Source of the DNA: Ministeria vibrans ATCC 50519
Taxonomy: Eukaryota > Protista > Filasterea
Direction: 5' to 3'
Assembly (NCBI GenBank): GCA_943704425.1
Contig: CALSCP010001345.1
Span: 78,370-142,369 of the forward strand
DNA length: 64,000 nt
The position numbers and the translations under genes are program-made. The notes under the pieces are model-generated. The model made no database searches, was not told the DNA's origin, and was given only the letters and a program-made list of their open reading frames with translations. Of the stretch, positions 2,955 through 39,164 are shown in pieces (the first letter of the stretch is position 1; every line of letters begins with the position of its first letter).

Positions 2955-4655
2955 TTAGTCGTGCCAGTCAGTGCCATTGAGTGACTGAGAGGAGTCCTCG
3001 CGATGGATTTGGGCGCGACGGGAGTCGAGAGCAGATGAGAGACGCTCGGCCATCGTACTGTTGTTGCTGTTACTGTTGTTGCTGTCGTTGGGAAATGGAG
3101 GCGGGGGAGGGGCCTCGCTAAGAGGACGGAGGGCGGTGGCGCCAGAGCGAATGGAGTCGAGGAGAGCCCGACCGAGGGTGGCGGAAGGGGATGATGGGGA
3201 CGAGGGGGAGTCGATGGGAGGAGGTGGGAGGGGCGGGGCGGGAGACTGTGACTCTTGCTGTTGGGCGACTTGTTGGCGGAGGCGTTGGATTTCGTCGAGT
3301 GCTTGTTGGAGCTCCAGCGCGTTGGTGTCGCCTGGTGGTGGTACCGTTGACGGGGGCGGAGGTGGGGGGAGGGGAAGGGTCGATAAAAGAGAGGGTGTAA
3401 GAGGGGGCGGAGGCAGTGAGGCGGGAAAGAAAAGGTCGGGAGGGGGAAGGGGGAGATCTGTTAGGGGAGGGGGAGGAGACGAAGGAGAGCACAGACTGAA
3501 GGCTGACTCATCACCGACGTCAAACAGGGCGTCGTGAGAGTAGTTGGTGGGTGTAACGAGAAGTTCGGAGGAAGCGTCGTGCAAGTTGCTGTGCTCAATG
3601 ACTTCTTCGAGGTCGTCTATGGCGTCGATAGAGGGTGGACGGTCGGTGGTGGCTTGTTGGAGGCGCGCAAGAAGAATGGTGCGAGGAAGGGATGCTGAGG
3701 AGGAGGGCGAGAATGAAGAGGAGGAAGAGGAAGTCGCGCCGGTGGTGGACGAGGCACAGGTTGAATTGGACGTCAGACTTGCAGTGCTTGTCGAGTTGTG
3801 TGCAGAGAATTGCAATGGTAATGAGGGAGGTAGAGGTGGAACCGCAGCGGCAACAACAGCCACGTTTTCTACTCCTCGTTCGCCCTCTTCCTGCGTCTCT
3901 TGCTCCTCCTCCTCCTCCTCGTCGTCGTCGTCGTCGTCGCTCATGGCGTCAATTGGAGGGAGCGACGAGGGACGATTGGACGAGGCATGAACGAGTCTGT
4001 CGATACTTGCTGGCCGCGGACGACGGGTGCCAGGGTCTTCGTTGATGGCCATGGCGGAGGTGCGGTCGAGGGGCGGGGGCATGTCAACGTCGTCGAATGA
4101 GATGGCAAAGGCAGATGTGGAGTCGCGCGAGAGCGCTGGTGGAGCACTGTCGTCGATATGCCCATCGTATGAGATGGCAAAGGCAGACGTGGAGTCGCGC
4201 GAGAGCGCTGGTGGAGCACTGTCGTCGATATGCCCATCGTATGAGATGGCAAAGGCAGATGTGGAGTCGCGCGAGAGCGCTGGCGGCCCGTCTCGGGTGG
4301 CGTCGCTGCCGCCATTCGTTAGAACGGTGCATTGTGTAGGGCTGCGAGCCACGGCAGGGTCCATCGCGAGGTCGGATGGGCGGTAATCGGCAGAAGACGA
4401 ACATGCCGTTGATGAGCTTTTTTTGGCGTCGGCTTGTGCGGGCACCACCGAGGCTGCAGGGGCCGCGGGGACGCCGGCAGGCGGTGGAGGCAGGGCCAGG
4501 GCGGGCGGGGGACGGCGGTGGACGACGGTCGTGCCGCGGTGCCCTTGGCGGATCGACGGCGAGTCGGCCGGACGACTGCGCTTCACCACGGCGTGCGCAC
4601 GCTGCGACACCGCATCAAACACCACCTTGGTCTCACTAATGACCTTTTCAATCAT
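2955..4655 (-). CDS. Proline-rich protein with C-terminal WH2-Central-Acidic (VCA) module; WASP-family-like nucleation-promoting factor
   Basis: Polyproline runs, WH2 GRALLDSIRSGATALRPL, central helix MAERLSSALDSRRAQIH, terminal DWHD with the conserved Trp. Probable ATG at 4655. Confidence 0.75.
   Translation of the reverse strand: MIEKVISETKVVFDAVSQRAHAVVKRSRPADSPSIRQGHRGTTVVHRRPPPALALPPPPAGVPAAPAASVVPAQADAKKSSSTACSSSADYRPSDLAMDPAVARSPTQCTVLTNGGSDATRDGPPALSRDSTSAFAISYDGHIDDSAPPALSRDSTSAFAISYDGHIDDSAPPALSRDSTSAFAISFDDVDMPPPLDRTSAMAINEDPGTRRPRPASIDRLVHASSNRPSSLPPIDAMSDDDDDDEEEEEEQETQEEGERGVENVAVVAAAVPPLPPSLPLQFSAHNSTSTASLTSNSTCASSTTGATSSSSSSFSPSSSASLPRTILLARLQQATTDRPPSIDAIDDLEEVIEHSNLHDASSELLVTPTNYSHDALFDVGDESAFSLCSPSSPPPPLTDLPLPPPDLFFPASLPPPPLTPSLLSTLPLPPPPPPSTVPPPGDTNALELQQALDEIQRLRQQVAQQQESQSPAPPLPPPPIDSPSSPSSPSATLGRALLDSIRSGATALRPLSEAPPPPPFPNDSNNSNSNNSTMAERLSSALDSRRAQIHREDSSQSLNGTDWHD
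4099..4285. repeat. 72-bp coding tandem repeat (~2.6 copies; PPALSRDSTSAFAISYDGHIDDSA)
   Basis: Near-identical DNA units seen directly within the VCA gene. Confidence 0.9.
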
Positions 4656-16965: not shown

Positions 16966-17645
16966 CTATTGAGGTGCTGCCGACTTGCTCATGGTGTCCG
17001 TGGCGATCTGACGCATTGTGACAGACACCTCCTTGGCCATGTCCTCGAGCCCGTGTCCCGCAAAGATATCCATAGAGATCATGGCGGCGGGGTCAACGAA
17101 CGACACCACGACTTGGTCGTCTTCGCTGTACACCGACACGCGACAGGGCAACAGTGAACTGACCGTCATGGTTTGGGAGAGCACAGCGCTCGCCTAAGGA
17201 AGACACAAACGCATTAAGACACACACACACACACACATATATAAATATATTACATATATATTCACACACACACTCCCTCACTCACTCACACAGTGCGCGA
17301 GTATATATATCTACGCACCTTCTTGGGGTTACAGACCTGGTAGACGATAAGGTCCTTCTCGAAAGGCTCGCCCTGTGAGAGAGAGTTGAGTGGTCAGAAC
17401 TCGCACTTATCACAAGTTGTACAACAGAAAACCGAACGTTTCGTCTTTCTCACCTTAGAAATCAATGTCGACTTGATATCGACCTTGCCAACGACACCAA
17501 ACTTGTTCTCGACAATGGCCTGCTCCAGGTTGGCGCAGACAGTCGCAAAGTCAGCGGCGCTGTAACGACAGAGTGAATATGAATAACATGTCAAGCGACT
17601 GAAGCGCAGTCCGTACCAGCGCATTTCAACGAGTCCGGAAGCCAT
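16966..17645 (-). CDS. DUF302-family protein (~138 aa, 4 exons)
   Basis: Spliced product MASGLVEMRCAADFATVCANLEQAIVENKFGVVGKVDIKSTL...VYQVCNPKKASAVL...SSLLPCRVSVYSEDDQVVVSFVDP carries the CNP and LLPCR hallmarks. Confidence 0.85.
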
Positions 17646-18122
17646 GCTTGGTATGGTGTATGATCGGGTGGGTGGGTTCGAATGAATTAAACTAAGTGAT
17701 AGAACCAAGTCGGATTTCAGAATTTGTCTTTCAATTGGAAAATGTCGGCAAACGAATAACCGCCGATCTGTGTCTATTCATGCAGCACACGCTGTAAGTT
17801 ATAATAAGCAATAATTATGCATGAAGCATCAAAGCATGAATAGTCATGATGACTGATCACTGATATGTCAAAGGAGAATGTACATTATTATGAAAATCAC
17901 ATGAAAATGATATGTAAAGAAACTCCACACACTCTTTTGAGGGGCTTCTGAGGCGAGTCTATTCATTATACACTCAATAGTCAATATAGTATGTGGCGGA
18001 AGCATTCAGCAATCCACAATCAGCAATAATTCAGCATTGACTGTATTATTTGTACTACTCTTACTGATCGATGAGCAAACTAACTAAACTTTTATAGAAA
18101 TATTATATTATTTGTATTGCTC

Positions 18123-19681
18123 ATGCTTCGATTTTTGCTGCTAGTGGCCACCTTGGTTGTTACAATCCAAGGAGTGGACGAGGCAGAGATGTACGCCCTC
18201 TGATTGTATTTTTTTATTGTTTTTATTGNNNNNNNNNNNNNNATTAATAATAATAATAATAGATCCTCACAAGATGGAAATCTGGTGATCTCGCCGAGCA
18301 GCAGTGGCGCTGTGCATGTCATGGGGGATGCTCTGTACGTCAATGGCTCTCGCGCTGTGACCAATGCGTCGTGGACTGAGCGCACTGCATCGCTTTTTGA
18401 CCGCATTGCGCGACTGGAGTGCTCTGCAAGCACCAGTGGCTGCTCTGCCTCGCCCGCAACAGCCACGGCCGTCTCGACTGCCACGGCAACCCCGACGCCC
18501 ACACCCGCCCCCTCGGCAGACCCCGACCCGCAACCGCGCTCAACGCCCTTCATCGCCACGTTCGACACGACTCGGTCAAGCAACCGCGCCACCAACGAGA
18601 CGCAGCTCAACCTGCCCCTGCAGTCGTCGGGAACGTACTCTTTCGTCGTCGATTGGGGCGACTCCTCCCAATCAGACACAATCACGTCCTATGACGATCC
18701 GGCCGCGACGCACAACTACGCCCAGCCCGGTACAGAACATACACGAGTGGACACCACCACCAGGCCTCGCCCCACACCGACTTCACTGATCTCTACTCTA
18801 CTGTACTAGGGACGTATACCGTCACAATTCAGGGCCAACTCGACGGCTGGCGCTACAACAACCAAGTGGACTGTGTCAAACTCATCTCGGTCCTCCAGTG
18901 GGGCTCCCTGCGTCCCATGAGCTCAAACGGTAACTATTTCTCGGGCGCAGTGAACATGGACGTGCTCGCAACGGACACACTCGATCTGTCGCTCACTACG
19001 ACGCTCGCTGGTGCGTTCACTCGAACCAAAATTAGCTCCACAGGCAACTTCAATGCGTGGGACGTCGCACATATTGTCGACTTCTCTTTCTGCTTCAGCT
19101 TCTGCACCTCGTTCAACCAGCCCCTCGACCAGTGGGACACGTCGAGTGCCATCAACATGCGCAACATGTTCTACACCGCGTCCATCTTCAACCAGCCCGT
19201 CGAAACGTGGGACGTCTCGCAGGTCACCGACATGTCGGCCATGTTTCAACTGGCGCGTCGCTTTAACCAGTCACTCGTGCAATGGGACACGGGCAAGGTC
19301 GAAATCATTGATGTCATGTTCCGGCAGTGCACTGACTTCAACGGCAACGTGAGCACGTGGGATACGTCTAGCATGCGTCAAATGGCATTTGCCTTCAACG
19401 AGTGCCCTTCCTTCAACCGCGACCTGTCCGCCTGGATCACCACTAGTGTCACCTCCATGTCATACATGTTTAAAGATGCCACATCCTTCAACCAGGACAT
19501 TAGCGCCTGGGACACGTCGTCCACCACGCAAATGACCAACATGTTCAACAATGCCCGTGCATTCAACCAAGATTTGTCAAGCTGGTGCGTGGCCCACATT
19601 GCGTCACAGCCCGCCTCGTTTGACGCGAGTGCGTCGGCTTGGTCCCTCAGCAGACCGCTTTGGGGTGTGCCGTGTGTCTAA
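18123..19681 (+). CDS. Secreted DUF285/BspA-type (bacterial surface 25-26-residue repeat) protein with cubilin-N-like leader and PKD-like domain, 3 exons
   Basis: Signal peptide MLRFLLLVATLVVTIQG. PKD-like VDWGD...THNYAQPGTYTVTI. Repeats FNQPLDQWDTSSAINMRNMF. C-terminal WCV...P..F...W...P.WG..C. Confidence 0.88.
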
Positions 19682-24393: not shown

Positions 24394-27300
24394 TCAAAGA
24401 TCCACGTCATCCAAATCGGGTGGACCGTCCTCTTCCATCTCAGCCAAGTCGGGCGGGCCACTCTCTTCTGAGTCTTTTTCGTCTGCCTTGCACCCTCCTG
24501 CTTCTTCCAATGGCACCCCTCCAAGTACATCAGCGTCCACACTCGCAACCGAACTCCAAGACGACACACTCGCACTGCGCATAAACTGTCGCGCATCCGC
24601 ACTCACATCTGACGCATCTTCGAACTCAATATTGTTCATAAACGATCGACGCGATCCAATGCTGCTGGACGCAGACGGACGCCGAGGCCGACGCACAGCC
24701 TCAGCGAGAGAGGCGGGCATGCGAGGGGCCGTCTTGCAGACAGGCGGACTGGCACTGGCGACTGCAGATGGTGGGGGCGTGGACAGTGAGCCGGGTGTCC
24801 TTGAGGCAGACGCCGCAGGTGATGGAGGCAGGAGGGGCGGTGTGTTGGGTGGGAGTGAAGGGACTGTCAAAGGTGGTGGGGGCAGAGAGGCAGGTGGAGC
24901 GGAAAGGGATGGGGGTAAGGCAGGCGGAACACTCGTCACAGGCGCAAATAGTGGCACAGTCAATCGCACAGGCGGTACACTTGATGGCACAGGCGGTACA
25001 CTTGATGGCACAGGTGGCACACTATCTGGAACAGGTGGCAGACTGACTGGCCGCACAGAGGACACACGTAATGGCGCACTCACTGGCACTGGAACCGGTA
25101 CTGGCAATACTCGTTGACACGCCTCCAGTTGAATTTTCCACTCCGACGCCTCTTCGAGTGCCAACCCGTCCAAATCAACACCACTCCTCATCTCGCTGCT
25201 CTTCCGCCTCAAACTCAACTCCTCGTTACCAAACGAGATCGATTGCGTTCTCCTGCACAGTCTCTCCTCCTCCTTTACCTTCCACTCCTCCAGCGCCCCA
25301 CTCAGTCGCTTCTTTCCCTTCAACTCACTCCCCGACATCACCAAGGTCTCCCCTTCGTCTCCGCCAGACCTCCACTTCACCAACACTTTCTCACACTCCT
25401 TCCAATCACCCCTCCCGCTGCTTTCCCCGCCAATCCTCTTTCCTTCTTTCATCCCGCGTTGCTCACTCAACCGCATCGCCGCCTCAGCCCGTCGCGACGT
25501 CGCCTCCACCAGCTCCCTTTGCACTCGCCTTTCATCATCTTTTCCTTCCTCCATCCCTCTTGTCCCGTCGCTCTCCATTCGTGACAACTCCCGTCGCAAC
25601 CCAATCCCACTCCACGCTTCTTCTGTTTTCTCCGCCTCCTCTCCCTCTCCCTCATCCTTATCTCTCTCCTCCTCCATCTTCCTCCGAAGCACAGCACTTC
25701 GTTCATTCAACTCCCCAATCACTCGCAGAGTCGCCTCCTCCATTCCTTCCCTCCCATCACTCACACTCAAGACAACGCTCACCGTCCCCTCCTCCTCCTC
25801 TTCCTCCTCCTTTTCATCATCAACTTCTAATAATCCTCCATCCTCACTCTTCAATTCCAACTCCAACTCGACGTCACTATCACTAGTGCTGGTCGCCACG
25901 TCAAACGTACCCCCGCCCGAATCACACCCAAAAGCACGGCGCGTAAACTTTTCATAGTCCAATCGTCCGTCAACATCACAGTCCATCCGTTCCACACAAT
26001 ACCGCACAGCCTCCTCATCCCCTTCAAGCATCGCCAACAGTCGCTTCCGCGTCAACATTCGCATCTTCTCCCCGCGTAGCAGCTCCCGAAACCCATCCAA
26101 AACCACCCCCATCGAATCCACCCGCTCCATCTCCCGTCGCACCACGCACTGCATGTACTCACCGCGTCCCAACGTGCCTCGTCGTGCCCCTGCCAACTCA
26201 AACATCGACTCACACTCCCCCTGCTCATCATCAAATCGATAGCCCAGCGACTGCAGTGCCCCGCGAAACTCTCGCAGTGTCAGTCGTCCCAGCTGCGCAC
26301 GATCAAAGTAGCTGAATGCCCGTGATATCTCCTCCAGTCGCTCGTCGCTCACCCCGTGCTTCCCTCGTGCTTCCTCTTGCTCACGCACTACCAACTCCAT
26401 TTGAACCAGCAGTGCCTCGGCCGCACGCCACGCCCGATGCAGCGACTCTACCGTCTGCGTCGTGTACACCCCACCGCCACTCTCGTGCTCCCGCATCGCA
26501 CTCTCCAACGCACACACTCCTTCCAGTGCCGCTCGTTCTCCCTCTAGCTCTCCTTTCAGCTCTTCCACCACCATCAACTGCTCGTCGAGTTTTCGTACCG
26601 CCACACTTGCCCGCCCCACTCGCTGACTAAACGCCGACAGCCACGCCGCAAGACGATCCGCCGCCGCCGCATACTCCCGACTCGCCAGCTCACTCTCCTC
26701 CAAGTCGTCCAGACGAAACTCCAGCCGTACTACCGCACTCTTCAACAGCGTCTCAAGCTCATCAAACCGCCCCACTACCACGTCCCACTCGGCAGTGTAC
26801 GTCGCCCGTCGTCCACCCACCTCCCCACGCAGAGCCTCCAGCCGCGCTATCCGCTCTTCCACCTCCCCAATTGTACTTATCGCCTCACGCTCGCACAACG
26901 CCTCCATCTCATCCTCCATACCATCAAGCCATCCCAACAGTGCACTGCGCTCCCCCTCATTCTCCCGCGCTGTCTTTTCCTGCGCCACACGCAGTGCCCT
27001 CTCCGTTCCAATGTGTTCCAGCTCCGCTGTAAGCTCAGTTAAATACTCATGTATGCTTGCACAATGTCGCTCCGGCAACGCCTCCTCCTCCTCCTCCTCT
27101 TGCTCCTTCCCCAAACGCAACAGTTGCGTTCCTTCCTCCACAAGCGCCACACACTCTGCCTCGCAATCATCTGCGTCGCGCTGGCTAACTTCCGCCTCTT
27201 CAACACTCCATCCTAAAAGTTCTTCCGCCTGCAACTGCCATTCGTCTGCCACTTCAATACGCTCTCGCACACGATCTTCCCGCTGACGCTCGGCCACACG

Positions 27301-30300
27301 CTGCTCTGCCTGTGACAGCAACTGCTCCAGCAACGCATGCGCCTCCGTCACACGTTCCACCACCACTTCTCGTAGCGCCCACTGCGCCATGCGCACCGCC
27401 AGCTGTTCACGCACCGTCTTAAGCGTCTCCGCATCGTCCATTGGCTGACCCATCGTCTCGCGCGCCCACTTTGCTTCTGCGTCGCACTCGCGCCGCAACT
27501 GTCGCTCCCGCTCGCTCTCTGCTCGCTCTCGTTCAACCCGCTCTCGCAAAACCCGAATTGACGCACACAGCGATTGCACGCGTGCTCCTTCCGCCTGCAC
27601 TGCCTCTGAACAGCCTTCGGCCACAATCGCGTCACGCTCGGCCATCTCTGCGCGCTCCACCAGCACACGCAGACACTCTTCGCCCCGCTCGTCAATCATT
27701 CCGTTTGCCACCTGATCGTGCAACTCGTAGTAGTATCGCGTGAGAGTGTTCTCGTGTGCCCGCACGCGTGCCGACACTTCTCCTTCATGCTCGCGCGCAC
27801 TCAGCTGTTCTCGATGAATTGCAATTTCGTGTCGCAGCGCAGCTACAGCCGCCTCTGCCTCGTTTCCTTGCACTCCATACTCCAACTCACCCAGTCGCGT
27901 CTCGAGCTCACTCGTCACCCGATCCAACTGCACCACTGCCCCTCCATTGCCCAGTTCCGCGTGCGGCGCCACAAGCAACTCCGCACGCGCATCCGAAAGC
28001 CACAATTGAAACTCCTGTGCCTCCGCGTCCATCACCTCCTCGGTCCGTCGCTCGTCAATACGATCCAGCTCTTCGTCGCACAATTTCTCCAGGTGCGTCC
28101 ACGCATCCAACACGCGTCCCACAAGTTCATCGGCCGCCGCACTACCCACATGCGTTGCATCTGCTGGCTCCATCTTCTCCGTGTACGCTGCAACATACCG
28201 TCGAATAGTTGCCAATGACGTGCCCTTGTGCGACAGAACGTACTCTACATGCTCAGCACGCGCCTGTAAGTCCCCATGCCCCGCCATCAGTGCCCCCTCC
28301 TGACTTTGCGTCCACTTCAGAACCCCTTCACACTCGTCACGCAGTCGCTCCCATCGCTGTCGCCCTTCCAGCCGTACCTCTATATCTCCCATTCTTCTCT
28401 TGACCGCCTCCAGTCGCGCACGCACCCGTCGCACGCGTGCGTCGTCCACCGCATCACGCTCCAGCTCGTCGCACGCAATCTCCGCCGCACGCATTTCGGT
28501 TGCGTACTCCTCACGATGCGCTCGCAATCGCAACTCGGTCGACTCCGTTGACGGGTCCGTCTCGTCCTCTTGCACATACCGCTCCAATCGTGCACTCATC
28601 GACAGTTCCAATTGCTCGAAACGACCATTGACAATCACACGTCGCTGGCATACACGCAATCGCTCCACAGCACTCTCCCACGCCTTTCGTGTGCACACAC
28701 GTTGCGCGCGTAGTTGTTCCATCAAAGCCACACTCGTCCCGCCTGATCCGCCCTCTTCTCCTTCAACCACTTGCACTGTATTCGCCTGGAACAGCTCCGT
28801 GGCCTGTCTCTCAAGCGACCCAATGACACGCGCGTGCGCCTCAAGGTCACGTGCCATCTCGACGACACTCTCCTCGTCGTTGACAGCACGCTCGCTGTCG
28901 CGTTCCATTGTCTCCCGCAGCTCCAAAAACGCATCCAGTACAGTTTCCACTTGCTTGTGCAGTGCCAGTCGCTCTCGTTCACACATAATGTCCGTCGCAA
29001 ACTGAGCTAAACGACCACGCACCGCCCGATCGCGTCCCAACAGTTGCACATGCAGTGGCTCAGGCAGTGCCTGCAGTGCGACATCTACTTGTCGCTCCAG
29101 CTCACGATGCACACGCTCAATGCTCGCCAGTGGCTCGGTACCCGCTCCTTGCACCGCAGCGTGTGTCAACACGTGTGGCACACTTGCATCGACCGTCATG
29201 AGCTGCTCAAGACACTGACTAACCACGTGTCGCTGCCGACGCAGCTCTCGACGATCTCGGTTCTGCTCCCGCACCTGCGCAAGTCCCGTCTCAACCAGCG
29301 CCAGACGGGCACTTAGCACCTCTACATCCACCGCTGACGTACCCTCATTTGTACACAATGCACTCAACTGCTCGCGTGTCATCGCCGCATCCACTAGGCT
29401 ATTCTCAACCTCTGCCTCTTCTTCTTCTTCCTCCTCCTCCTCCTCCTCCTCTTCGTCTTGCCCATTTTCACCTTCGAGTTCGGATATAAGTGCCCCATTA
29501 GTGTGCACCAGACGATTCAGAGTCTCTTCAAGCAGACCCACTCGCTCTGCAAGCGACTCCAGTACTTCCATAGCTTCCACATGCGCCACGACCCGCTCCA
29601 CTTCTTTCTTGACACACTCCAGCGATTCCGTCACGCGCACTCGTTCGGCGCGCACAAACGCATCGTCACTCAACGTCTCGATTGACGACAGCTTGCTCTC
29701 CACCTCCACTGCGACTGTGCGCGCCCGAGCAACCCCATCGCGATCCACTTCCTGCAGACAAGCTCGCATGCGCGCCACTCCATGACTCGCCTCCTCCAGT
29801 ACTTGTTTCTGCCGTCGCACCACCTGAGCTCGCTCCATCTGTGCCTGAGTTTCCAACAGTGTTGCTTCCAACTGTACCACACTCTGCTCGAGATCTTCGT
29901 ACGCATAGCTCACTTGCTGAAGTGGAGTGTCCCGCCACGCAGAGGGCACATACATCATGGCGGCCGCTTCCATCGCCTCCAGATCACTGCGACGCCCGTG
30001 CACGGTGCTCACCAACATGGTCACTCGGTCCACCACGGCGAGACCTTCCTCCTCCGACGTGTCCACCACTATCCCCAACTGCACGACGCAGGACGCCACG
30101 GTGACTCGCTGTGCCTCACACCACTCGCGCAGCCTCTCTAGCTCACACAGCCACTCCACGTGTGACCGCACTTGCGCGACAGCACTCACTGCCGCCCGTA
30201 TCACTCTTTCCAGCAACTGCCATGCCTCGTGTAGCCGCACCATCCGCTCCATTGTAACCGTGACATCCCTGGTGGTCGCAGGGGCATCATTCGCTAAAAT

Positions 30301-33300
30301 GTGCGCCGCACGCTTGCGCAGTCCCTCCAAACGTTGGCTCTTACAGTGGCCCAGCGTTTGTTGGAGCAACGCAAGAGTCTGTTGTTGCTCGCGTACATTT
30401 GCAAGTTCCTCTTCCATGTCGACAAGAGTGCGCATGGCCGCCACAGCCGAGTGTGTTGCCACCACCGGCACGCTTTCCAGGTGGCGCCGCAGCCACGACT
30501 GCAGTGCCGCCACATCTACTGCAAGCTGCTGTGCCTCACTGCGCCATGCCAACATGTGTTGCACCTCCGTCACGCGCACACTCAGTGGATGCGCGTCACC
30601 CAACACCAATGGTCGAATCTCATGGTCCATCAGCAACGCCAGCTCCCGCTGCAACTGCTGCACACCATCCACACTCTCGAGAGACTCGGCCACAGTCTGA
30701 ATGCTGGAAACACGCGCTATCAAATGATTGGCAGTCGTCTCGGTGCGCCACTGCTGTTCACGCTCCCTCAGCCTGCCAATGTACACACGCAGCGAACTTT
30801 TCAGAGAGTCGCGCGCGGTGACTGTCATGTCACGCAGCTGTGTCCACTCTTCGTGTGCGCGCGCGACAGCACGCTCGTCAGCAAACAATCCCATTTGAAG
30901 TCGTCGTTGCCTGTCAAAACACTCCTCGAGCTGCACGGCCTCGACGCGCCTTAATCGTTCCTGAGCACCCTCTAAAGTGTCATTGCATGCCTCCTCGCGC
31001 GACACCTGCTCCTCAGCCAAACGCGCCAGAGTGTGTCCCGCCTGCTCAAGCACACGTCGCTGCACTGCCGCCTCGTGCAGAAACACAGCAACCGCATGCT
31101 CGTGCGCTGCACAATCTGCCTGACGACGAGCACAATCGCACACACGCGTCCACAGCTCTTCCAGTTCGGTCATAACACGCGACGCCAAAGCATTGCCACT
31201 GGTCACAAGGGTGCGTGATACGCGTCGCAGCTCCTTCATGCGCTCCTGCTCCTCCACCATCACATTGCGCTCGTGAAATTCGCGAAAGCGACGTTCGTTC
31301 ACACTCGCTTGGTGCACCGACGCAGCACTTAGCTCCATACTCGCTAGCGTCTCGAGGTCGGCGAGACGCAATCGAGCGCGTCGAGCGTCGCGCTGAAACG
31401 TGTGCCACGCCACTGTGCTCTCGAGGCGCACGAGCGCCTCGTCCAGCTGATCGCGGGTCTCCGCAACGCGCTGTCGCTCCCCATCCACACACTCAAGCTG
31501 TCGTGCGAGTCGTGTGAGTTCCTGGCCTGCCTGACGCACATCTGTCGCCGCATTGCGCAACACAATCAGATTCTGAGTCTCGTCCGCATTGTGAAGCAGT
31601 TGTGTTGCACGCTCCAGACGCTCTGTGGCACACGCGAGCCACCACGAGAGTTGTGCGTGGGTGGCAGCGCCACTGTCCAACCCCAAAGCAGCTTCACGAT
31701 ACGACGCGCGTCTTGTGTGAGCGTCCAGTCGTCGCACCACCTTGCCCATGTACGCCTGCGTGGCGCGTCCACTCTCAATCAATGCCCAGGGGTCCTCGCC
31801 CAGTGCTTCGCCCACTGCACACAACTGCTCTTGCAACTGGTGCAGTTTGTCGTGCAGCAGCGCACGGTCCTCTTCCAGCGGATCCACTCCAGTCGTATTT
31901 GCGCCGGCCGTCGCACTTGACAGCGTCAGTTGAAGTCGCTCGGAACAGGTGCGCACACGAAACAGTGCCACAATGCCGGTGAGATGCTGTAAACGCACGT
32001 ACGCCTTGGTCTTGAGCTCACCAAACTCACGCACCATTTCGTCGTGTCGCGAGCGCAACTGATCACCGTGAGAGCGCACAAAGAAGACGGAAAACCCCGT
32101 GAGCATTGCGGACGCCCGTGCGCCCAACTCATTGACCGAGTCCATCTTGAGCATGACACTTGCCTCTAGTCCCCGATGGTGCTCCAGCAGATCCTCGTTG
32201 GCCACTTGGTCCGCACCGTACGCCGTCGACTGCAGCAGCGAGTCCATCTCGTGGATCCATGCCATGAGTGCGTCAGCGTCCTGGAGCCACCCGACCAACT
32301 TTGACATCTGCTTCAGCACATTGCTCTTGCCACGTGCCGCAATCTGATTGTGCTCCAGGTAGCGCTTGACCTTGATCAAGAGCTCGGCAGTGCTGCTGCG
32401 CTCAGCTTCTTTGTGACTGCTGGCAGGCAACGCCAGCAACTCGCGCCAACGTGTCTCGTGTGCGGCGAGGGCCGCGCACAGGGCCGCGTGACCCTGCTCC
32501 GTAACGGAGAGTGTCTCAAGCGCGTTGCGATACGAGTTGTCGCCAAGTTCGCCCGACATGGAAACCAGCTCATCGAGGAGCGCCCACAGGTCCTCTTCAA
32601 AAAGCCACACGTCCTGAAGTCGCGTGAGTGCCTCTGTTTGTTGCTCAAGCAGATTTGCAAGTTCGTCGAGTGCACTCAGTGTGGGCTGCATGTAAGCGTG
32701 TACTGCAACGGGCGCCTGCAGCAGCTTGTGCAATGTCGCGCGTCGTGTGTTCACCTGATCCTCGAACGTGGTGAGCTCCGTCAAACGCACGCGTGTTTCT
32801 TCCACACTCTCACAGCCGTGCGGCCCGATGGCACGCACACTCTCCAGTGACATGCGAAGCCAAGCAAGGTGCGAGTCACAGTCGTGTGTCCACTGCTCGC
32901 GTTCGTGTCGTGTGTGCAAGTGTGCTTGCACCTCCGCCGCAGTCGTCTTGATTGTCGCCAGCGCAGTGCGCAGTCGCGGGTCTTCTTCAGTTGTATCCGC
33001 ACGCGCAAGAGCATCGCTCTCAATCTCCTTGACAATCGCTCCAAGATCGTCTCCCTCCGCGGTGCACAAAGCCTCGAGCCGGTCCGTCAGACCTTGCAGG
33101 TGGCGCAAGTCATTGACAATGCGCTGCTCACGCAACGTCGCCTCGCGCGCCACCTGCTCACTGCGCAACGCCTCAATGGCACACGTGTGGCACTCGTTGT
33201 AGTACGCCGAGAGAGCCACATTGTCCAGGTGACGCACAATCTTCGATAGGTCCTCGAGACGTTGCACACGCGACGACAATGTAGACACTGTCGTTTGGTC

Positions 33301-36300
33301 TGTTGTGGGGTAATCCGCCTGCACGATGCGCTCAATCTCGCTGTGCAGTCGTGCCACACGCTCCTGCTCCTCCCACTCGCGACAGGCACGCTCGGCTGCC
33401 GACGCACGCTCCATCAGTTGTTCTTTGAGAACAAGTGCGCGCTCTTCAAGTGCCACTGTGACCGCACGCGACGTACGACCACCGTCAAACTCAGCTTCGA
33501 GGGACGCCACAAGAGCCCGATGGGCGCGCCACTCGGCCAATTCAAAGGGATCGTACGCCTCAAGTGCCGCAAGAGACTCTTCAAGGTGCACAAGCCAGGC
33601 GGTGCCCGTCTCCACCAGTGTCTCGGCGGCACGCGATCGTTCTCGTTCCGCCAGCACACGTCGGGCATTGTCGAGCGCACACTGTGTCTCTTTCGAGGGC
33701 AATGCATTGTGTGCTGCTGTGGCACGTCGAAGCACCGCGTCTATCTCACCCGGCGGCAATGAAGAACCTAGTGCATCTGACAGAGCATCAAAGGCGGTCG
33801 CGACTACGTTGCGCAGTCGCTGTTCACGTCGCATGGCCCCCAGTTGTTCTCGCGCCGCTGTCCGTTCCCTAATACGTGAGCGTGCGTCGTTCATACGCTT
33901 CACAATGCCATCACACTGTTCGTCGAGTGCCGACTGCCAAGCGACCGGAATGGTACCAACAAGGTCAAGAGTGTCGCAACTCAAATGAATCTCGTCGAAG
34001 CGACTCTGAGCCACATTCACCAAAGACTGGCTGAGTTGCTTCTGAGCCCCAAACCACTCTGCAAGCTCGCGTGTCTTGCTCAACATCTGCAAGAATATGT
34101 CAGCGTTGTGGCAAAAGCGCTCGCTGGCATCGCGAGCGGCACACACACTTGACTCGTCGCTGAGATTGTCGTTGGCCATGCGACGCACCAATTTGGCATG
34201 GCGCTCGAGGTGCTCACGGGCAGACGTGGGAGGCACACTGGCACTTGCTGTGGTGTTTTGTTCAAAGCCCTCTTGGAGCTGAGCTGCAAGACGGAGACGT
34301 TGTTCGCGCAGAGCGTCTTGACGTGCGTGTTCTCGTTGCACAATACTCTCCGCAATAGCTGTGCTCACCGTCTTGCGAGCCGTCTCACTGGCTTGGGTGA
34401 GCTTGACATGGGTGTCGAGGCAAAGGCGACGAGCCTCGGCAACGAGACTCGGTAAACGTTCCGCGATACAGACATCGAGGTCACGCTGGACACGGCGCAG
34501 GTGTGTCAGGGGCGAGTGGGTGCCCAATGTGGAGGTAATGGACTGAAACCAGTCGAGTACGGGAGCAGCACGGGTGCGCCAAGCATCACGGTCGAGTGCC
34601 AAAGCGACGGCACTCTTGCACTCCACGAGACGACGCACAAGCTCGGACCAGTGCATGTCGAGCACCGACAGCACAACTAAGGTGGGCATGGCAGTGGTGA
34701 AGGCCAGACACTTTTCAACTGCGTCTTCGAGCAGCAGTGTGTCTTGTTCGACAAGCGCAAGAGCACGCTGAGCCTGTTGAAGCACAGGCAGCGAGGAGGA
34801 CGCTGAGGCAACACGCTCGGACTGCACTAAAACGGTCTCGGAGGCACGCTGAACGCCCGCGAGGAGTCGCTGGGCACGTTCTTCAAGGATGAGAGCACGG
34901 TGGCGCTCGACGATGGCAACACACGCGACGCGGTACTGCTTGGTAAGAGCGACAATGTCGTCTACGAGCGGGCGCTCGCGAGTCGCTGCCAGCTCGGGCG
35001 GCACCTGAGCGTGCAACTGACGCACTTGGTTGACAAGCAGCGCCAAGTCTGAGTCGGCAAATCGGTCGAGGCGGGTACGTAGCATGTCGAGGGCGTCACG
35101 GTCGGGAGGACGACGGCGCGCGAGAAACGAGTCGACGAGAGACGTAAGCCACACGCGTTTTTGTTCGACGGCAGCACGCCACTGCGACAGCCGGTTGATC
35201 AGTGCCTGATGGGGATCCGTTTCTTCACTTGCACGCAACATGGCCGCCTCAAGGTGGTCGTGAGCAGCGGCAAGGCACTCCTTGAGGACACGATGACGCA
35301 GAGTGAGTGAGGCTGCAGTAGTGGTATTAGAGGGAAGTGAGCGAGCGCGCTCTTGGACGCGTTCTAGCTCACGACGCTCCTCGTCCAACTGTTGCTGAGT
35401 GCCGGCGCTCTCATGGATGCGGTTTGATGCAAGACGGGCACGTAGGATGAGACGGTTCAATGCCGCGACCGATTCGTGGTCGGGAAGGGCGGCTGTAAGA
35501 CGACGGAGGCGCTGGTGAAGCGACGCGTCGACGGACTCGAGAGCACGCACAAGCGCAGTGAGACGTGGACGGACCAGGCGCTGGCGGTCCTCGCCAATGA
35601 GATTGGGCTGAGCGTACTCGTGCTGGAGCTCCTCGATGCGCTGACGGTGGGAGGAAAGGTCGCGCTGGAGTGCCTCGACCGAGTCAATGAGCTCACGGCA
35701 AGTGTCTGCGTTTGTGCCTGTTGACGTGGTGTGTGCGTGGCGCCAGATTGTCACACACCAGTCTTCGTGTAACTGAAGACGCACGCACAGGTCGTCAAAG
35801 TGTCGCTGACGTTCGCGGTCGGTGCGCGCTTGTTCCACACACACACTTAAGCGCCCCAATGCGTCGTGAAGCTGCGTGGAGAGCGAGAACAGCGGTGATT
35901 CATGAGTACGATTGAGCGCAGGGTGGGCTTTGGAGCGTTCTAGGAACGACTCAGCAGCGACAATGGCACCAGCAGAGACAGTCTGAAGGGCAGGACGGCG
36001 GTCGGAACGCAGACGGTATTCGTGGCGTGTGGCGTCGTTGAGGAGACGCGACAGGACATGAGCCGTCTCGCGCAGCGCCTGAGCTTCGCAGGTGAGTTTG
36101 CGACGCGAATGGAGCACCGAGAGAAGTTCACACCAATAGGGTTCAAGCTGGGGAGCAGACGCTATGGCACGTTCACGTTGAGACGCCACGTGGGCTGTGA
36201 GAGCGTCAATGTGACGCAATGAGCCCGATGGGTCGACAGCGTGTGAGTCAATGTGGCTGACTGCATCGTTGAGCTGTGCGAGTGAAGTCGCCACGGAGTG

Positions 36301-37585
36301 AAGGAGACGCGCCTGTTGTTTGCGAGCGGCGTTCCGCGCGATAAGTTGCGCGGAACGTGCACGGAGTTGCTGCAGGAGACGCGTTTCGCAGTCGGTGAGA
36401 AACCCCCAGGCAGAGTCGAAGGCGGCACTGCTCAAGGAGGAAGGCGGGGAGTACGCAACGCGCCCCATACTCTGACGGAGAGTCTGTAGCGAGTGCATGA
36501 GGGCGACGAGTGCATGGTGCTCACGAACTCGCTCGGAGACGTGTGTGGTGCGCCAGTGAGCAATGCGGCGGACGAGACGATGGGCTTTGTCGAGGGTGTT
36601 GCAGGTGTCGATGAGACGGGCGGCTTGCTCACTGAGCAGTCGTGTGGCGGCGCGAAGCCAGCAGGCGAGGTGTGTAGCGCGACGTACATACTCGGTCGTG
36701 AGCGACTCGACGTGACGCAGAGCACTGATAAAGCTGCGGAGACGTCGTGAGGCGGCGGCGCGCTGGTGGGCATTGGCAAAGTGATGGTAGTAGGAAGAGA
36801 CGTAGGCGAGAAGAGCGCGCTCGTCGATGGGGAGCGCAACGGAGCCTACAAGGTCGTCGACGTCGAGCAACGATGGAATGGCAAGGTGCTGCTCGGCGAC
36901 GGAAAAGGCCGTCTCGAGAGCGGCACGCGGATTGCGACGTGCCAAGAGACGATGGTAGTCGACGAGGTCCGGTCGGTTGTGATGGAGGATGGCGAGGAAG
37001 GGCAGGCCCGACGCCCACGTTTGCCGGCCCGAGAAGTCGGTGATGCCTGTGATGCCTGGATAGCCATGGGTCTGGCGCTGGCACCAGAGCAGGAGCGCCT
37101 GCTTGGCCGTGCAATCTTCAAACGTGATGGTGTGTATTTGGTAGCGAAGCAGAATGGTCCATAGCAACCCCAGCGTGAGTTTTGCGTTGCCATCGACAAT
37201 GTCCTCGGCTCCAATGTTCTCTAGCTTGACCCCTCGATCGCGCGCAAGGTGATCCAGGACGCTTTGAACGGCGCCAATGTGATGGATTTTGGAGTGACGA
37301 GACGCCGACAGAGTCGCTGACGTGACAACGCCTGGCAGGCTCAGGCCGCTGATGCGCTCAATGAGGGTCCGCAGAAGCTCCCCGTCGCGGCAGTCGTGTC
37401 CAACGTCATTCAGGCGGACCGCTGTTGACGTGAGCTGAAGGAAGGCAAAACACCAAGAACAGTTTGTTGACATTGATGAACACCGCTAAAAAAATCGGAT
37501 CCCAATGTCCTTTTTTTATCGCCATCACACACGCGCGTACCTGTGAGTTGGCCCACTTGACCAAGGCGCGCTGTTGCAGAGACAT
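24394..37585 (-). CDS. Giant spectrin/alpha-actinin superfamily protein (~4,360 aa): CH1-CH2, ~30 degenerate spectrin repeats, EF-hands, acidic/Pro-rich tail; exons 37585-37541 and 37434-24394
   Basis: Exon 1 MSLQQRALVKWANSQ completes CH1. GVKLENIGAEDIVDGNAKLTLGLLWTILLRYQI and ALLLWCQRQT follow. Spectrin repeats include WLQDADALMAWIHEMDSLLQSTAYGAD. EF region GVSDERLEEISRAFSYFD...LDYEKFTRRAF. Confidence 0.9.
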
Positions 37586-37671: not shown

Positions 37672-39164
37672 ATGAGCGAACCGTGGGAGCGTGTCGCTGT
37701 GGCAGCGGGCCGCGCATACGCCTCCAACATGGAACTGATGATGTCGGAGACGGGCGAACGATGTCGGACGGATCCGCCGAGTGACGTTGGTGCGTTTTTT
37801 TCGTTGGGCGAAAACGGAAAAGTTTTGTGTCGCTTCACTAGAGCCGATGGGGAGCCGTGTCGGTCCAGGGTGTTTGGGGGCGAGGATGTAAAGCGCCATT
37901 TTACCTACTTCCACCCCACGAGCAAGCACCGCCTTGTCTGTGTCGTCTGCAATTCGTATGTTAGTTGTGGCAACCTCAAGAGACACGTCGCTTCTCAGCA
38001 CAGCAACACATTCACAGCGACTGTCATGGAACGCGGTCCGCTGGAGGACGGAGGATGGAAGACGATCTACCTGCGAGAGGTGCGTGCGGCCCTGGAGCGC
38101 GACGGAGAAGAGGAGGACGTTGAGGGAGAAGTGGCCAAGGTGTTTGGTCGTGGCGAGTGGGAACAAGTCCCAATGGGATTTGAGACTTGGTTGGCGATGG
38201 CACGGGGCGAGAAGGAGGATGAGGAGGACACGATTGTGTTTGAGATGCTGGGGGATGGCAAGGTGCGGTGTCGGTGTCGACTGGTGGACGGACGAGTGTG
38301 TACGAGACAGGGATTTGCGCCTGAGTGGGTTGGGCATCATTTCTCAAAGTGGCATCCTCGGAGTGTGTACCGCGTCAATTGTGTGGTGTGCAAGGAGGAT
38401 TTGGCGCCACACAGAACAACTTTCAATCTACACATGCTGCAATCGCACGGTGATGTATTCAGTCGTGGCTGTGACTTGCTGAGGGTGTACTCTTCTCTTG
38501 TGCGCAGTGCGCTTGAGGAGCGCAATGCGCCTGAGTCTGTCATTGTGCGTGAGCTGCAGTTGTTGCGTGAGAGTGAGCGAGTGCCGTCGTCGTTCTCGGA
38601 GTGGCTGGCGTGTGCGCAGAAGGAAGAGGGGAGTGGTTGTGGTGCGGTGGACCTCGACGCGTCGTTTGAGCGACTGTCCAACGGTCTATTCAAATGTCGA
38701 ATGGTGCGACCGGCAACGGGACAAGTGTGTGACTACGCGCCATTCACAAAGGGGCGTGTCGGTAATCATTTTAGTGACTATCATGTGCTGAGTGTGTATC
38801 GCACTCGATGTGCCATCTGCTCGCACTCAGTGTCAACGGCCGGCAGTCTGCGGAAACACTTACGCCGATGTCACTCTTCTGAGTTCACTGACACTGTGTT
38901 GGCATCGACCTGGAAGAGTGTGTACAGTGAGTGTGTACGGAGTGAAATGTTGAGAGAGGGAAAGAGTGAGAGTGCGATTGAGAGAGAATTGGGTATTTNN
39001 NNNNNACTGACACTGTGTTGGCATCGACCTGGAAGAGTGTGTACAGTGAGTGTGTACGGAGTGAAATGTTGAGAGAGGGAAAGAGTGAGAGTGCGATTGA
39101 GAGAGAATTGGGTATTTTGTATGAGTTTGAGAAAGTGCCCGCTGGCTTTCACCAGTGGACTTGA
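37672..39164 (+). CDS. Protein with three tandem ~140-aa repeats, each holding two zinc-finger-like motifs (C-x9/10-C..H-x4-H and CxxC..H-x4-H) plus a helical segment
   Basis: Repeated C(R)xxxxxxGxxC, HFxxxH, RxxCxxC, VPxxFxxW. The true end ELGILYEFEKVPAGFHQWT* lies after a duplicated gap overlap. Confidence 0.75.

What the first reader, a model, noticed from the sequence alone, without database searches (positions are those of the whole stretch)
24394..37585. Single-chain 'beta+alpha' spectrin: actin-binding head and alpha-spectrin-type EF-hand tail joined by ~30 repeats
Seen: one ORF (13 kb in a single exon, in an otherwise intron-rich genome) has CH1-CH2 at the N-terminus, ~3,450 aa of degenerate spectrin repeats, and then an EF region GVSDERLEEISRAFSYFD..LQSLGY..REMERVDS..YCVERM..DYEKFTRRAF. 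Known: that tail follows alpha-spectrin (GVTEEALKEF..LRSLGY..RETENVKS..YCVSHM..DYVEFTRSLF). The CH pair is beta/betaH-spectrin- or actinin-like. Animals keep these on separate chains, alpha-actinin has only 4 repeats, and spectrins are proposed to derive from a split elongated actinin. Inference: this is either a surviving unsplit ancestor or a secondary fusion. It would form very long antiparallel homodimer actin cross-linkers without a tetramerisation site. I saw no SH3 or PH domain.
Basis: partly seen in the sequence, partly recalled or inferred. Interest (0 to 1): 0.8.

Follow-up and report, generated by a model that had tools for sequence, protein, structure and literature searches.

The report
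Divergent single-chain spectrin-like giant gene
This gene encodes a ~4,361-residue protein with a spectrin/actinin-type actin-binding head and an alpha-spectrin-like EF-hand domain on one chain. It is the most eroded copy of a family of such "unsplit" spectrin-like genes in a probable close unicellular relative of animals, so it bears on how animal alpha and beta spectrins arose.

Summary
The ORF is real. It lies on the minus strand, with a 45-nt exon 1 (37585-37541), a 106-nt GT-AG intron, and a 13,041-nt exon 2 (37434-24394), giving about 4,361 aa.

**Confirmed:**
- a tandem CH head (Pfam E 6e-28);
- a calmodulin-like domain plus last repeat that matches choanoflagellate alpha-spectrin (E 2e-24) and ACTN2 (E 1.5e-13);
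- no SH3, PH, GAS2, WW or ZZ domain.

- a 496-aa disordered tail after the EF hands;
- degenerate EF loops.

**The rod is only partly verified.** Pfam finds one clean spectrin repeat and a family-specific HMM finds five. Weak hits far exceed shuffles, but there is no 106-aa periodicity.

**Family context.** The same genome (probably Ministeria vibrans, per earlier scan notes) holds several better-preserved genes of this kind. One has a C-terminal 2,400 aa collinear with the whole of alpha-spectrin.

**Trees.**
- ML trees put both termini of this gene on the spectrin side, not the actinin side.
- Its branches are long, and AU tests do not reject an actinin-side placement (p about 0.2).
- Giant "alpha-actinins" of Anaeramoeba and Vermistella are separate elongations on the actinin side.

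The scan had already found this family on other DNA (s1-763920, s1-770234). Verdict: a real, fast-evolving member of a single-chain spectrin family. The unsplit-ancestor reading is plausible for the family but is not shown by this copy.

The parts
37541..37585 (-). Exon 1 (15 codons, MSLQQRALVKWANSQ): start of CH1
   Evidence: Sequence read: ATG at 37585, GT donor at 37540. The motif matches the canonical start of CH1 in actinin and spectrin. Inferred from sequence; no RNA evidence.
37435..37540 (-). Intron 1 (106 nt, GT...cttcag, phase 0)
   Evidence: The paralogue on C596 has an intron at the same position, with its exon beginning L-GKTSTSF against L-TSTAVRL here.
24394..37434 (-). Exon 2: 4,346 codons plus stop, uninterrupted
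   Evidence: no N in the gene.
37138..37434 (-). CH1 (the part in exon 2)
   Evidence: Six-frame Pfam CH hit, 50.1 bits (C1345:115507-115827 converted to window coordinates and trimmed at the acceptor site).
36775..37107 (-). CH2
   Evidence: Pfam CH, 61.4 bits in the six-frame scan; best stretch.
26365..36729 (-). Rod, about 3,455 aa: all-alpha, degenerate spectrin-type repeats without strict periodicity; contains a poly-Glu run
   Evidence: HMM hits against shuffles; language-model neighbours are Spectrin clusters; AF2: helices of 20-60 aa; three-helix bundle; no 106-aa period.
31981..32289 (-). The only repeat that Pfam Spectrin recognises cleanly (exon-2 aa 1716-1818)
   Evidence: 40.6 bits; 40.9 bits, E 3.2e-10.
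35497..35766 (-). Repeat recognised by the genome-specific repeat HMM (aa 557-646)
   Evidence: E 1e-6.
31150..31398 (-). Repeat recognised by the genome-specific HMM (aa 2013-2095)
   Evidence: E 3.7e-4.
30208..30420 (-). Partial repeat recognised by the genome-specific HMM (aa 2339-2409)
   Evidence: E 1.8e-3.
26407..26673 (-). Last repeat before the EF domain (aa 3588-3676), homologous to actinin repeat 4 and the last alpha-spectrin repeat
   Evidence: (E 3e-3).
25927..26355 (-). Calmodulin-like domain (EF1-4; aa 3694-3836); EF1 loop degenerate (DRAQLGRLTLRE)
   Evidence: (EFhand_Ca_insen, 21.4 bits).
24397..25884 (-). C-terminal 496-aa low-complexity tail (E 13.5%, S 13%, P 10.5%), no Pfam match
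   Evidence: The paralogues and P0005 also carry long tails after the EF domain.

Best explanation
This is an intact two-exon gene for a ~4,361-aa protein. It is a fast-evolving paralogue in a family of single-chain spectrin-like proteins of this genome, which is probably the filasterean Ministeria vibrans.

Shown:
- a tandem-CH actin-binding domain at the N-terminus;
- an alpha-spectrin/alpha-actinin-type calmodulin-like domain, preceded by a recognisable last repeat, near the C-terminus;
- an all-alpha rod of about 3,450 aa between them, in which only about five spectrin repeats are still recognisable;
- a 496-aa low-complexity tail, probably disordered.

Inferred: as in alpha-actinin and at the alpha/beta-spectrin nucleation site, two chains pair antiparallel. 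The first repeats and neck of one chain lie against the last repeats and EF3/4 of the other. This would give a very long rod, of the order of 150 nm if about 32 repeats of about 5 nm hold, with an actin-binding head at each end and no head-to-head tetramerisation site. The degenerate EF loops suggest regulation without calcium. The tail could be a docking or regulatory region.

Evolution: the family, not this copy, carries the signal. The family has a beta-side head and a C-terminal part collinear with alpha-spectrin on one chain, and it branches just outside choanoflagellate plus animal alpha-spectrins. This is most simply read as retention of the pre-split form.
For: - Gene model.
- Domains.
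- Paralogy, tail end: last repeat + EF is 27-31% identical to C572, C1674 and C738 (E 1e-21 to 2e-24).
- Paralogy, head end: the ABD is 50% identical to C596, with a shared intron position.
- ML trees: ABD with three paralogues (91/90) on the spectrin/plakin side of a 100/100 split. EF region on the alpha-spectrin side of a 100/100 split.
- Tail profile scores: 136 (paralogues + P0005) > 121 (alpha-spectrins) > 105 (actinins) bits.
- Family collinearity: C572 aa 398-2836 against whole Salpingoeca alpha-spectrin 14-2423, 864 bits. P0005 aligns with beta-spectrin at its N-terminus and with alpha-spectrin at its C-terminus.
- Rod: 32 HMM hits against 9.5 +/- 2.3, and 83.5 against 1.05 +/- 1.9 summed positive bits, real versus shuffled. 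Spectrin clusters are the nearest language-model neighbours. AF2 gives helices of 20-60 aa and a three-helix bundle with Z 10-11 to spectrin repeats.
- No beta-spectrin-type PH_9 or GAS2 hit lies on any spectrin-repeat contig.
Against: - End branches are very long: 1.2 (ABD) and 2.2-3.4 (EF).
- AU tests do not reject an actinin-side placement (p 0.187 and 0.20).
- In the careful EF tree this copy no longer groups with its paralogues.
- ABD pairwise and profile scores are highest for alpha-actinin: 165-180 against 143-148 bits, and 208 against 199/191 bits.
- The rod has no 106-aa periodicity, whereas paralogue C1674 shows Trp autocorrelation of 0.29 at lag 106.
- Pfam finds one repeat only.
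- AF2 confidence is low (pLDDT 55 and 65). Foldseek matches are not significant, and VIA Z values are in the range common to any three-helix bundle.
- There is no RNA evidence for this gene and no orthologue in the searches.
- Dimerisation and actin binding are untested.
Confidence: 0.68

Rival explanations
1. Lineage-specific elongated alpha-actinin. An ordinary actinin grew by repeat duplication, as happened in other protists, and has no special relation to spectrins.
For: - Single-chain ABD...EF proteins of 1,000-2,700 aa exist in Anaeramoeba (2,447 aa, named 'alpha-actinin'), Vermistella (2,711 aa) and others. They fall on the actinin side in both trees.
- This gene's ABD scores best against actinins.
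- AU tests do not reject an actinin-side placement.
Against: - ML trees place both termini on the spectrin side.
- The tail profile favours alpha-spectrin and the paralogues by 15-30 bits. BLASTP gives 103 bits to alpha-spectrin against 72 to actinin.
- Its paralogues are clearly collinear with alpha-spectrin.
- It shares an intron position and 50% ABD identity with paralogue C596.
Confidence: 0.12
2. Secondary fusion. Separate alpha and beta spectrin genes already existed in the filozoan ancestor and were fused head-to-tail in the filasterean line. This gene is then a diverged copy of the fusion.
For: - The tree topologies fit equally well if the split predated Filozoa.
- One paralogue (C738) has no CH domain within 8 kb upstream and aligns with alpha-spectrin 383-2422. 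It could be a relic alpha chain.
Against: - No PH_9 hit lies on any spectrin-repeat contig, so no canonical beta-spectrin was found. No SH3 was found in the paralogues scanned.
- C738 groups with the single-chain paralogues, not with alpha-spectrins proper.
- P0005, from another organism and about 30% identical, has the same single-chain layout.
Confidence: 0.12
3. Eroding relic. The gene is a redundant paralogue drifting away from the spectrin function. It keeps an actin-binding head, but the rod is now an irregular helical or disordered spacer rather than a spectrin-repeat rod.
For: - No 106-aa periodicity and no heptad signal.
- Pfam sees one repeat only.
- Degenerate EF loops.
- Odd amino-acid composition and the longest branches in both trees.
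- Low AF2 confidence.
Against: - A 13,041-nt exon without a single stop is hard to keep without selection.
- The ABD is still 44-50% identical to relatives.
- Weak repeat hits are spread along the whole rod, far above shuffles.
Confidence: 0.06
4. Gene-model or assembly artefact joining two neighbouring genes.
For: Nothing positive. Only the lack of RNA evidence here, and an N-gap with duplicated flanks 1.4 kb upstream.
Against: - One continuous frame, with no Ns inside the gene.
- The same head-to-EF layout recurs in paralogues and in a separately assembled contig of another organism.
Confidence: 0.02

Closest known systems
Alpha-spectrin (animals, choanoflagellates)
   Same: The last repeat plus EF1-4 domain is homologous (27% over 370 aa to Salpingoeca infusionum alpha-spectrin, E 1.7e-24). 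It lies on the alpha-spectrin side of the 100/100 split in the EF trees.
   Different: This protein has an N-terminal CH-CH head, no SH3 and no N-terminal partial repeat. It has a 496-aa tail after the EF hands. Its rod is not alignable to alpha-spectrin repeats.
Beta / beta-heavy spectrin
   Same: Tandem-CH head followed by a recognisable first repeat (35-36% identity over about 350 aa). Overall size is like beta-H (about 4,000 aa). The ML tree puts the head on the beta-spectrin/plakin side.
   Different: No PH domain, no C-terminal partial repeat, and no detectable ankyrin-binding repeats. It carries an EF-hand domain.
Alpha-actinin
   Same: Same order of parts on one chain (CH-CH, repeats, EF1-4). 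Best pairwise scores for the head (44% identity). The presumed antiparallel homodimer mechanism is the same.
   Different: The rod is about 3,450 aa instead of 4 repeats. ML trees separate both termini from the actinin clade, though not significantly for this copy. It has a post-EF tail.
Single-chain spectrin-like paralogues of the same genome (C572, C1674, C942; C596 and C738 incomplete or CH-less) and P0005 (Logan SRR19044621)
   Same: Same architecture, including a long tail after the EF hands. EF region 27-31% identical. ABD 50% identical to C596, with the same intron position.
   Different: Those have 14 to 50 crisp 106-aa repeats, canonical EF1 loops, and long collinearity with alpha-spectrin. 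This copy has lost the periodicity and the canonical loops.
Giant 'alpha-actinins' of Anaeramoeba flamelloides/ignava and Vermistella antarctica
   Same: Single chain with CH-CH head, a long rod (up to about 2,200 aa) and a C-terminal EF domain.
   Different: They group with alpha-actinins in both trees, so they are independent elongations. Their EF domain is at the very C-terminus.
Spectraplakins (MACF1, dystonin, Shot) and dystrophin
   Same: CH-CH head, many spectrin repeats and EF hands on one chain.
   Different: No plakin domain, GAS2/GAR, WW or ZZ domain here. The ABD is more distant (130-134 and 103-108 bits, against 165-180 for actinin).

Membership tests
Spectrin superfamily (actinin/spectrin/dystrophin/plakin) | Tandem CH1-CH2 actin-binding domain | tested here: met
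   Pfam CH 97.7 bits, two stretches. PDB phmmer E 1e-52 to 1e-28 across the superfamily.
Spectrin superfamily (actinin/spectrin/dystrophin/plakin) | Spectrin repeats (three-helix, about 106 aa) | tested here: met
   At least one repeat is above the Pfam cut-off (40.9 bits against 29.9). Five repeats are found by the family HMM. The rest of the rod is only statistically enriched.
   Trp and hydrophobic autocorrelation at lag 106 is at most 0.03, against 0.29 and 0.19 in paralogue C1674.
Alpha-actinin / alpha-spectrin calmodulin-like domain | EF1-4 following the last repeat, with an EFhand_Ca_insen-type EF3/4 | tested here: met
   ACTN2 repeat 4 + EF1-4, E 1.5e-13. Alpha-spectrin, E 1.7e-24. Pfam EFhand_Ca_insen reaches only 14-21 bits, below its cut-off.
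Alpha-actinin proper | Both termini inside the actinin clade; short rod (1-6 repeats) | tested here: inconclusive
   ML trees exclude it from the actinin clade (100/100 split), but AU p is 0.19-0.20. The rod is about 3,450 aa, so the rod length is not met.
Canonical alpha-spectrin | No ABD; SH3 inserted in a mid-chain repeat; N-terminal partial repeat for tetramerisation | tested here: not met
   The ABD is present and Pfam finds no SH3.
Canonical beta / beta-H spectrin | C-terminal PH domain and partial repeat; no EF domain | tested here: not met
   No PH. An EF domain is present. The genome's PH_9 hits are not on spectrin contigs.
Spectraplakin | Plakin domain and GAS2/GAR microtubule-binding domain | tested here: not met
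   Neither is found in the Pfam scans. The genome's GAS2 hits are on other contigs.
Dystrophin/utrophin | WW, EF and ZZ cysteine-rich region | tested here: not met
   Pfam finds no WW or ZZ. The ABD is most distant from dystrophin and utrophin among the superfamily members compared.
Single-chain spectrin-like family of this genome | ABD and EF domain on one chain, homologous at both ends to the paralogues, with a post-EF tail | tested here: met
Functional antiparallel actin cross-linker | Dimerisation through terminal repeats; F-actin binding | not testable with these tools
   Inference from alpha-actinin and from spectrin nucleation-site biology. No multimer prediction was available.

The most novel reading that the evidence does not exclude
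This gene and its better-preserved paralogues descend directly from the never-split 'proto-spectrin' predicted by the model in which an actinin elongated and then split. On this reading the alpha/beta split, with SH3, PH and the tetramerisation site, happened only on the stem of choanoflagellates plus animals. Filastereans would still build their spectrin-like skeleton from antiparallel homodimers, and this copy would be a neofunctionalised offshoot with a new disordered tail.
Probability: 0.35. Interest if true: 0.8.

Novelty: new variant of a known kind. Interest (0 to 1): 0.55.

Why it matters
Reviews place the origin of spectrin in the immediate ancestors of animals, because alpha and beta chains are present in choanoflagellates (PMC4550062, PMC9145010). 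The proposed intermediate, an elongated actinin carrying head and EF tail on one chain, has not been described in the papers I could search.

A 2026 paper lists 'spectrin' homologues among genes of Ministeria vibrans up-regulated during aggregation. It does not discuss their architecture (PMC13366479).

A family of single-chain spectrin-like genes in a filasterean would make the split model testable, by repeat-by-repeat orthology and by examining the state of the tetramerisation repeat. It would also offer a natural homodimeric 'mini-system' for spectrin mechanics.

This particular copy adds less. It shows that the family has diversified and that one member is evolving fast, but it is too eroded to carry the phylogenetic argument.

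Tried and rejected
- **Spectraplakin or dystrophin identity:** rejected. No plakin, GAS2, WW or ZZ domain.
- **Orthologue searches:** word searches with the head gave only 36-44% identical spectrins, plakins and actinins, and no self or orthologue hit. A third word search, with the EF region of paralogue C1674, returned nothing at E <= 1e-15. I count that blank as uninformative.
- **AF2 on 762 aa of rod:** pLDDT 54.7, and its Foldseek search gave only noise.
- **AF2 on 321 aa of rod:** pLDDT 64.7. The best Foldseek rows were three-repeat spectrin fragments at E 0.6, not significant. VIA Z values of 10-12 are shared with unrelated three-helix bundles.
- **Extending the repeat HMM with this gene's own hits:** recruited no further repeats.
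- **Diagnostic-column counting between the actinin and spectrin sides:** only two usable columns per domain, so uninformative.
- **Organism of the nearest fragments:** cluster look-ups gave no names.
- **SxIP-type EB1 motifs in the tail:** none found.
- **Steps deliberately left out:** the spliced exon 1 + exon 2 model was not joined or searched, and exons were handled by reference separately. For paralogue heads, raw read-through translations were aligned, with intron-encoded residues falling in dropped columns.
Full report
**1. What is there**

The minus strand carries an uninterrupted ORF of 4,359 codons, 24394..37473. Reading upstream shows that the ORF's first ATG is not the start. A 45-nt exon at 37585..37541 encodes MSLQQRALVKWANSQ, the canonical beginning of a CH1 domain. 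It ends at a GT donor. After 106 nt, a pyrimidine-rich tract and an AG acceptor (37435) lead in phase 0 into LTSTAVRLNDVGHDCRDGELL...

The gene model is therefore:
- exon 1, 37585..37541;
- intron, 37540..37435;
- exon 2, 37434..24394;
- a product of about 4,361 aa.

There are no Ns inside the gene. Exon 2 was used by reference throughout.

**2. Domains**

Pfam on the ORF gives:

| Family | Bits | Note |
|---|---|---|
| CH | 97.7 (E 5.8e-28) | two stretches |
| Spectrin | 32.0 | cut-off 29.9 |
| EF-hand_7 | 23.3 | below cut-off |
| EFhand_Ca_insen | 14.1 | below cut-off |

Pfam finds nothing else: no SH3, PH, GAS2, plakin, WW or ZZ. Scanning the rod in four pieces and the tail separately leaves a single clean Spectrin repeat (exon-2 aa 1716-1818, 40.9 bits) and no family at all in the last 496 aa.

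Against solved structures:
- The head matches alpha-actinin ABDs best (165-180 bits). Beta-spectrin follows (143-148), then MACF1/plectin (130-134), then utrophin/dystrophin (103-108).
- The last repeat plus EF region matches ACTN2 repeat 4 + EF1-4 (E 1.5e-13). Alpha-spectrin follows (E 3.7e-9), then calmodulins.

The EF1 loop reads DRAQLGRLTLRE. It lacks the usual acidic or polar ligands at loop positions 3 and 5, whereas the paralogues have canonical loops such as DKNGDGTLDATE.

After the EF domain comes a 496-aa tail rich in Glu, Ser and Pro.

**3. The rod**

I built a repeat HMM from 129 repeats of this genome's better-preserved paralogues. The evidence from it and from other methods is as follows.

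- *Individual repeats.* The HMM finds five individually significant repeats in this gene: aa 557-646, 1716-1818, 2013-2095, 2339-2409 and 3588-3676.
- *Hits overall.* It gives 32 hits along the rod, against 9.5 +/- 2.3 in locally shuffled rods.
- *Summed signal.* Summed positive bits are 83.5, against 1.05 +/- 1.9 in shuffles.
- *Language-model neighbours.* For aa 2402-3690, 22 of 30 nearest named clusters are Spectrin-repeat clusters (score 0.91; a lead only).
- *AF2 without an alignment.* The prediction is all-alpha, with helices of 20-60 residues separated by short breaks, but confidence is low (pLDDT 54.7 and 64.7).
- *Fold comparison.* The first 100 residues of the second model form a three-helix bundle that superposes on spectrin repeats (1cun Z 10.9, rmsd 2.5 A over 98 residues). 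It superposes about as well on unrelated three-helix bundles.
- *Foldseek.* Matches are not significant.
- *Periodicity.* The rod lacks the 106-residue periodicity that is obvious in paralogue C1674. Trp autocorrelation at lag 106 is 0.29 in C1674 and at most 0.03 here. There is no heptad signal either.
- *Helix breakers.* A proline occurs about every 64 residues. This argues against a long two-stranded coiled coil.

My reading is that the rod is a strongly eroded spectrin-repeat rod. The count of '~30 repeats' is an extrapolation from length, not a measurement.

**4. The genome context changes the picture**

Six-frame scans of the whole assembly (29.7 Mb) show that this gene is one of a family.

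| Contig | CH head | Repeats | EF domain | Note |
|---|---|---|---|---|
| C572 | yes | about 50 | strong EFhand_Ca_insen (73 bits) | |
| C1674 | yes | about 28 | 66 bits | |
| C942 | weak | yes | EF region present | |
| C596 | best in genome | at least 15 | unknown | runs off the contig end |
| C738 | none within 8 kb upstream | 17 | 74 bits | |

All members with a scanned EF domain also have several hundred residues after it.

This gene's last repeat + EF is 27-31% identical to C572, C1674 and C738 (E 1e-21 to 2e-24). Its head is 50% identical to that of C596. The intron that separates exon 1 from exon 2 lies at the same codon in C596, whose exon begins L-GKTSTSF against L-TSTAVRL here.

No PH_9 or GAS2 hit lies on any spectrin-repeat contig. 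No canonical beta-spectrin or spectraplakin of this kind was therefore seen.

Earlier notes of this scan had already flagged the family on other contigs (s1-770234, s1-763920, s1-765432, s1-764001). One follow-up (s1-763920) reached the same family-level reading. Several earlier follow-ups identify the genome as Ministeria vibrans. I did not verify that identification myself.

**5. Relatives elsewhere**

Word searches with the head found no orthologue. They found beta-H/beta spectrins (36-38% identity), spectraplakins (35%) and alpha-actinins (43-44%).

One hit, P0005, has the same single-chain layout: CH, Spectrin, EF, EFhand_Ca_insen and a charged tail. It is 2,616 aa, N-terminally truncated, and comes from Logan SRR19044621. 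It is about 30% identical to C1674, C572 and C738 over 1,750-1,940 aa.

A full HMMER search with a profile of the last repeat + EF (alignment A1) against 1.84 billion representatives gave 286 hits below 1e-30. Classifying them revealed many single-chain head-to-EF proteins of 1,000-2,700 aa. Named examples are:
- Anaeramoeba flamelloides 'alpha-actinin', 2,447 and 1,396 aa;
- A. ignava, 1,537 and 2,374 aa;
- Vermistella antarctica, 2,711 aa.

So a long head-rod-EF chain is not unique in itself.

**6. Phylogeny**

*EF tree.* Two versions were built: 97 rows with the quick method, and 43 rows with the careful method and the other long branch, C942, removed. A 100/100 branch separates two sides.
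- Actinin side: 4-repeat actinins plus all the Anaeramoeba- and Vermistella-type long proteins.
- Spectrin side: animal and choanoflagellate alpha-spectrins (Salpingoeca infusionum, Monosiga brevicollis), the paralogues of this genome, P0005, two metagenomic fragments, and this gene.

*ABD tree.* This has 46 rows and used the careful method. A 100/100 branch separates actinins and the long actinin-like proteins from beta/beta-H spectrins, spectraplakins, P0005, and a group of C596, C1674, C572 and this gene (91/90).

*Caveats for this copy.*
- Its end branches are the longest in both trees (1.2, and 2.2-3.4), and its amino-acid composition is deviant.
- In the careful EF tree it no longer sits with its paralogues.
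- AU tests do not reject trees that place it with the actinin side (p 0.20 for EF; p 0.187 for ABD).

*Profile scores*.
- Tail: paralogues/P0005 136 bits, alpha-spectrins 121, actinins 105.
- Head: equivocal, at 208 actinin, 204 long actinin-like, 199 beta/beta-H and 191 for the partial paralogue heads.

**7. Collinearity (family level)**

From:
- C572 aa 398-2836 align with the entire Salpingoeca alpha-spectrin (14-2423; 28% identity, 864 bits).
- C1674 and C738 align with its C-terminal 1,370-2,040 residues.
- P0005 aligns at its N-terminus with beta-spectrin (1-1729 against 185-1902, 693 bits; 37.5% identity to beta-H over the first 717 aa). At its C-terminus it aligns with alpha-spectrin (803 bits).

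In this gene only the ends align:
- aa 1-350 to actinin and beta-spectrin;
- aa 3497-3835 to alpha-spectrin 2060-2422 (103 bits, against 72 for actinin).

**8. Interpretation**

- *Both termini nest within actinin or spectraplakin clades:* not what the ML trees show, but not statistically excluded for this copy.
- *The rod is mostly non-spectrin coiled coil:* not supported, since there is no heptad signal, helix breaks are frequent and weak spectrin hits are enriched. The rod is, however, far from a regular spectrin rod.
- *There are two transcripts or a misassembly:* could not be tested. There is no sign of either in the sequence.

The best-supported statement is that this is a fast-evolving member of a single-chain spectrin-like family. 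That family, through its conserved members, looks like either the unsplit precursor of alpha/beta spectrin or an old fusion.

The mechanism is inferred from alpha-actinin and from the alpha/beta-spectrin nucleation site. It is an antiparallel homodimer with an actin-binding head at each end, no tetramerisation site, calcium-insensitive EF hands, and a disordered tail as a possible docking region. None of this was tested here.

**9. Literature**

- Reviews date spectrin to the immediate ancestors of animals, on the basis of choanoflagellate alpha and beta chains (PMC4550062; PMC9145010 found both chains in Monosiga and Salpingoeca rosetta).
- PMC13366479 lists spectrin homologues among M. vibrans aggregation genes and dates them to the filozoan ancestor, without describing their architecture.
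- I found no paper in the searchable library that describes single-chain spectrins. Much of the older spectrin-evolution literature is not in that library.

**10. Verdict**

The feature is real. The novelty lies in the family, which this scan had already noted on other contigs. This copy is its most eroded member and is weak evidence on its own.

Noticed in passing
G000:C572:21860-41639 (loci L003-L005): Giant paralogue with about 50 spectrin repeats. Three repeats 3.8-3.9 kb apart give identical Pfam scores (27709, 31522, 35457), and two long ORFs overlap in different frames at 31923-32022. This points to a recent internal tandem duplication or an assembly collapse or frameshift. A short alpha-actinin-like gene lies just upstream (CH hits at 17327-18227).
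   Followed up: partly
G000:C738:82625-90265 (L006-L007): Paralogue with 17 repeats, a strong EF domain and a 370-aa tail, but no CH domain within 8 kb upstream and no SH3. It aligns with alpha-spectrin 383-2422, so it could be a head-less (alpha-like) member or an incomplete gene model.
   Followed up: partly
G000:C596:1-7480 (L008): Closest head to this gene (50% identity, same intron position) and the best CH score in the genome, followed by at least 15 repeats that run off the contig end. Its C-terminus is unknown.
   Followed up: partly
P0005 = L011:151-8001 (Logan SRR19044621): A protein from an unidentified organism with the same single-chain layout. Its N-terminal 1,730 aa are collinear with beta-spectrin and its C-terminal 1,750 aa with alpha-spectrin, followed by a 520-aa Lys/Glu/Arg-rich tail.
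   Followed up: partly
P0241, P0283, P0266, P0295, P0381 (public proteins): Anaeramoeba and Vermistella encode 'alpha-actinins' of 1,400-2,700 aa that stay on the actinin side in both trees. These are independent elongations of actinin in distant protists.
   Followed up: partly
window 38890-39130: A run of 7 Ns flanked on both sides by the same ~110-nt sequence. This is probably an assembly gap artefact, 1.4 kb upstream of the gene.
   Followed up: no
G000:C12:64355-71895: A CH hit and a GAS2 hit lie on the same strand about 7 kb apart, within long open frames. This is a possible CH...GAS2 (GAS2-like or spectraplakin-like) gene.
   Followed up: no
window ~29650-29700 (exon-2 aa ~2570-2585): A run of about 14 consecutive Glu codons in the middle of the rod.
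   Followed up: no
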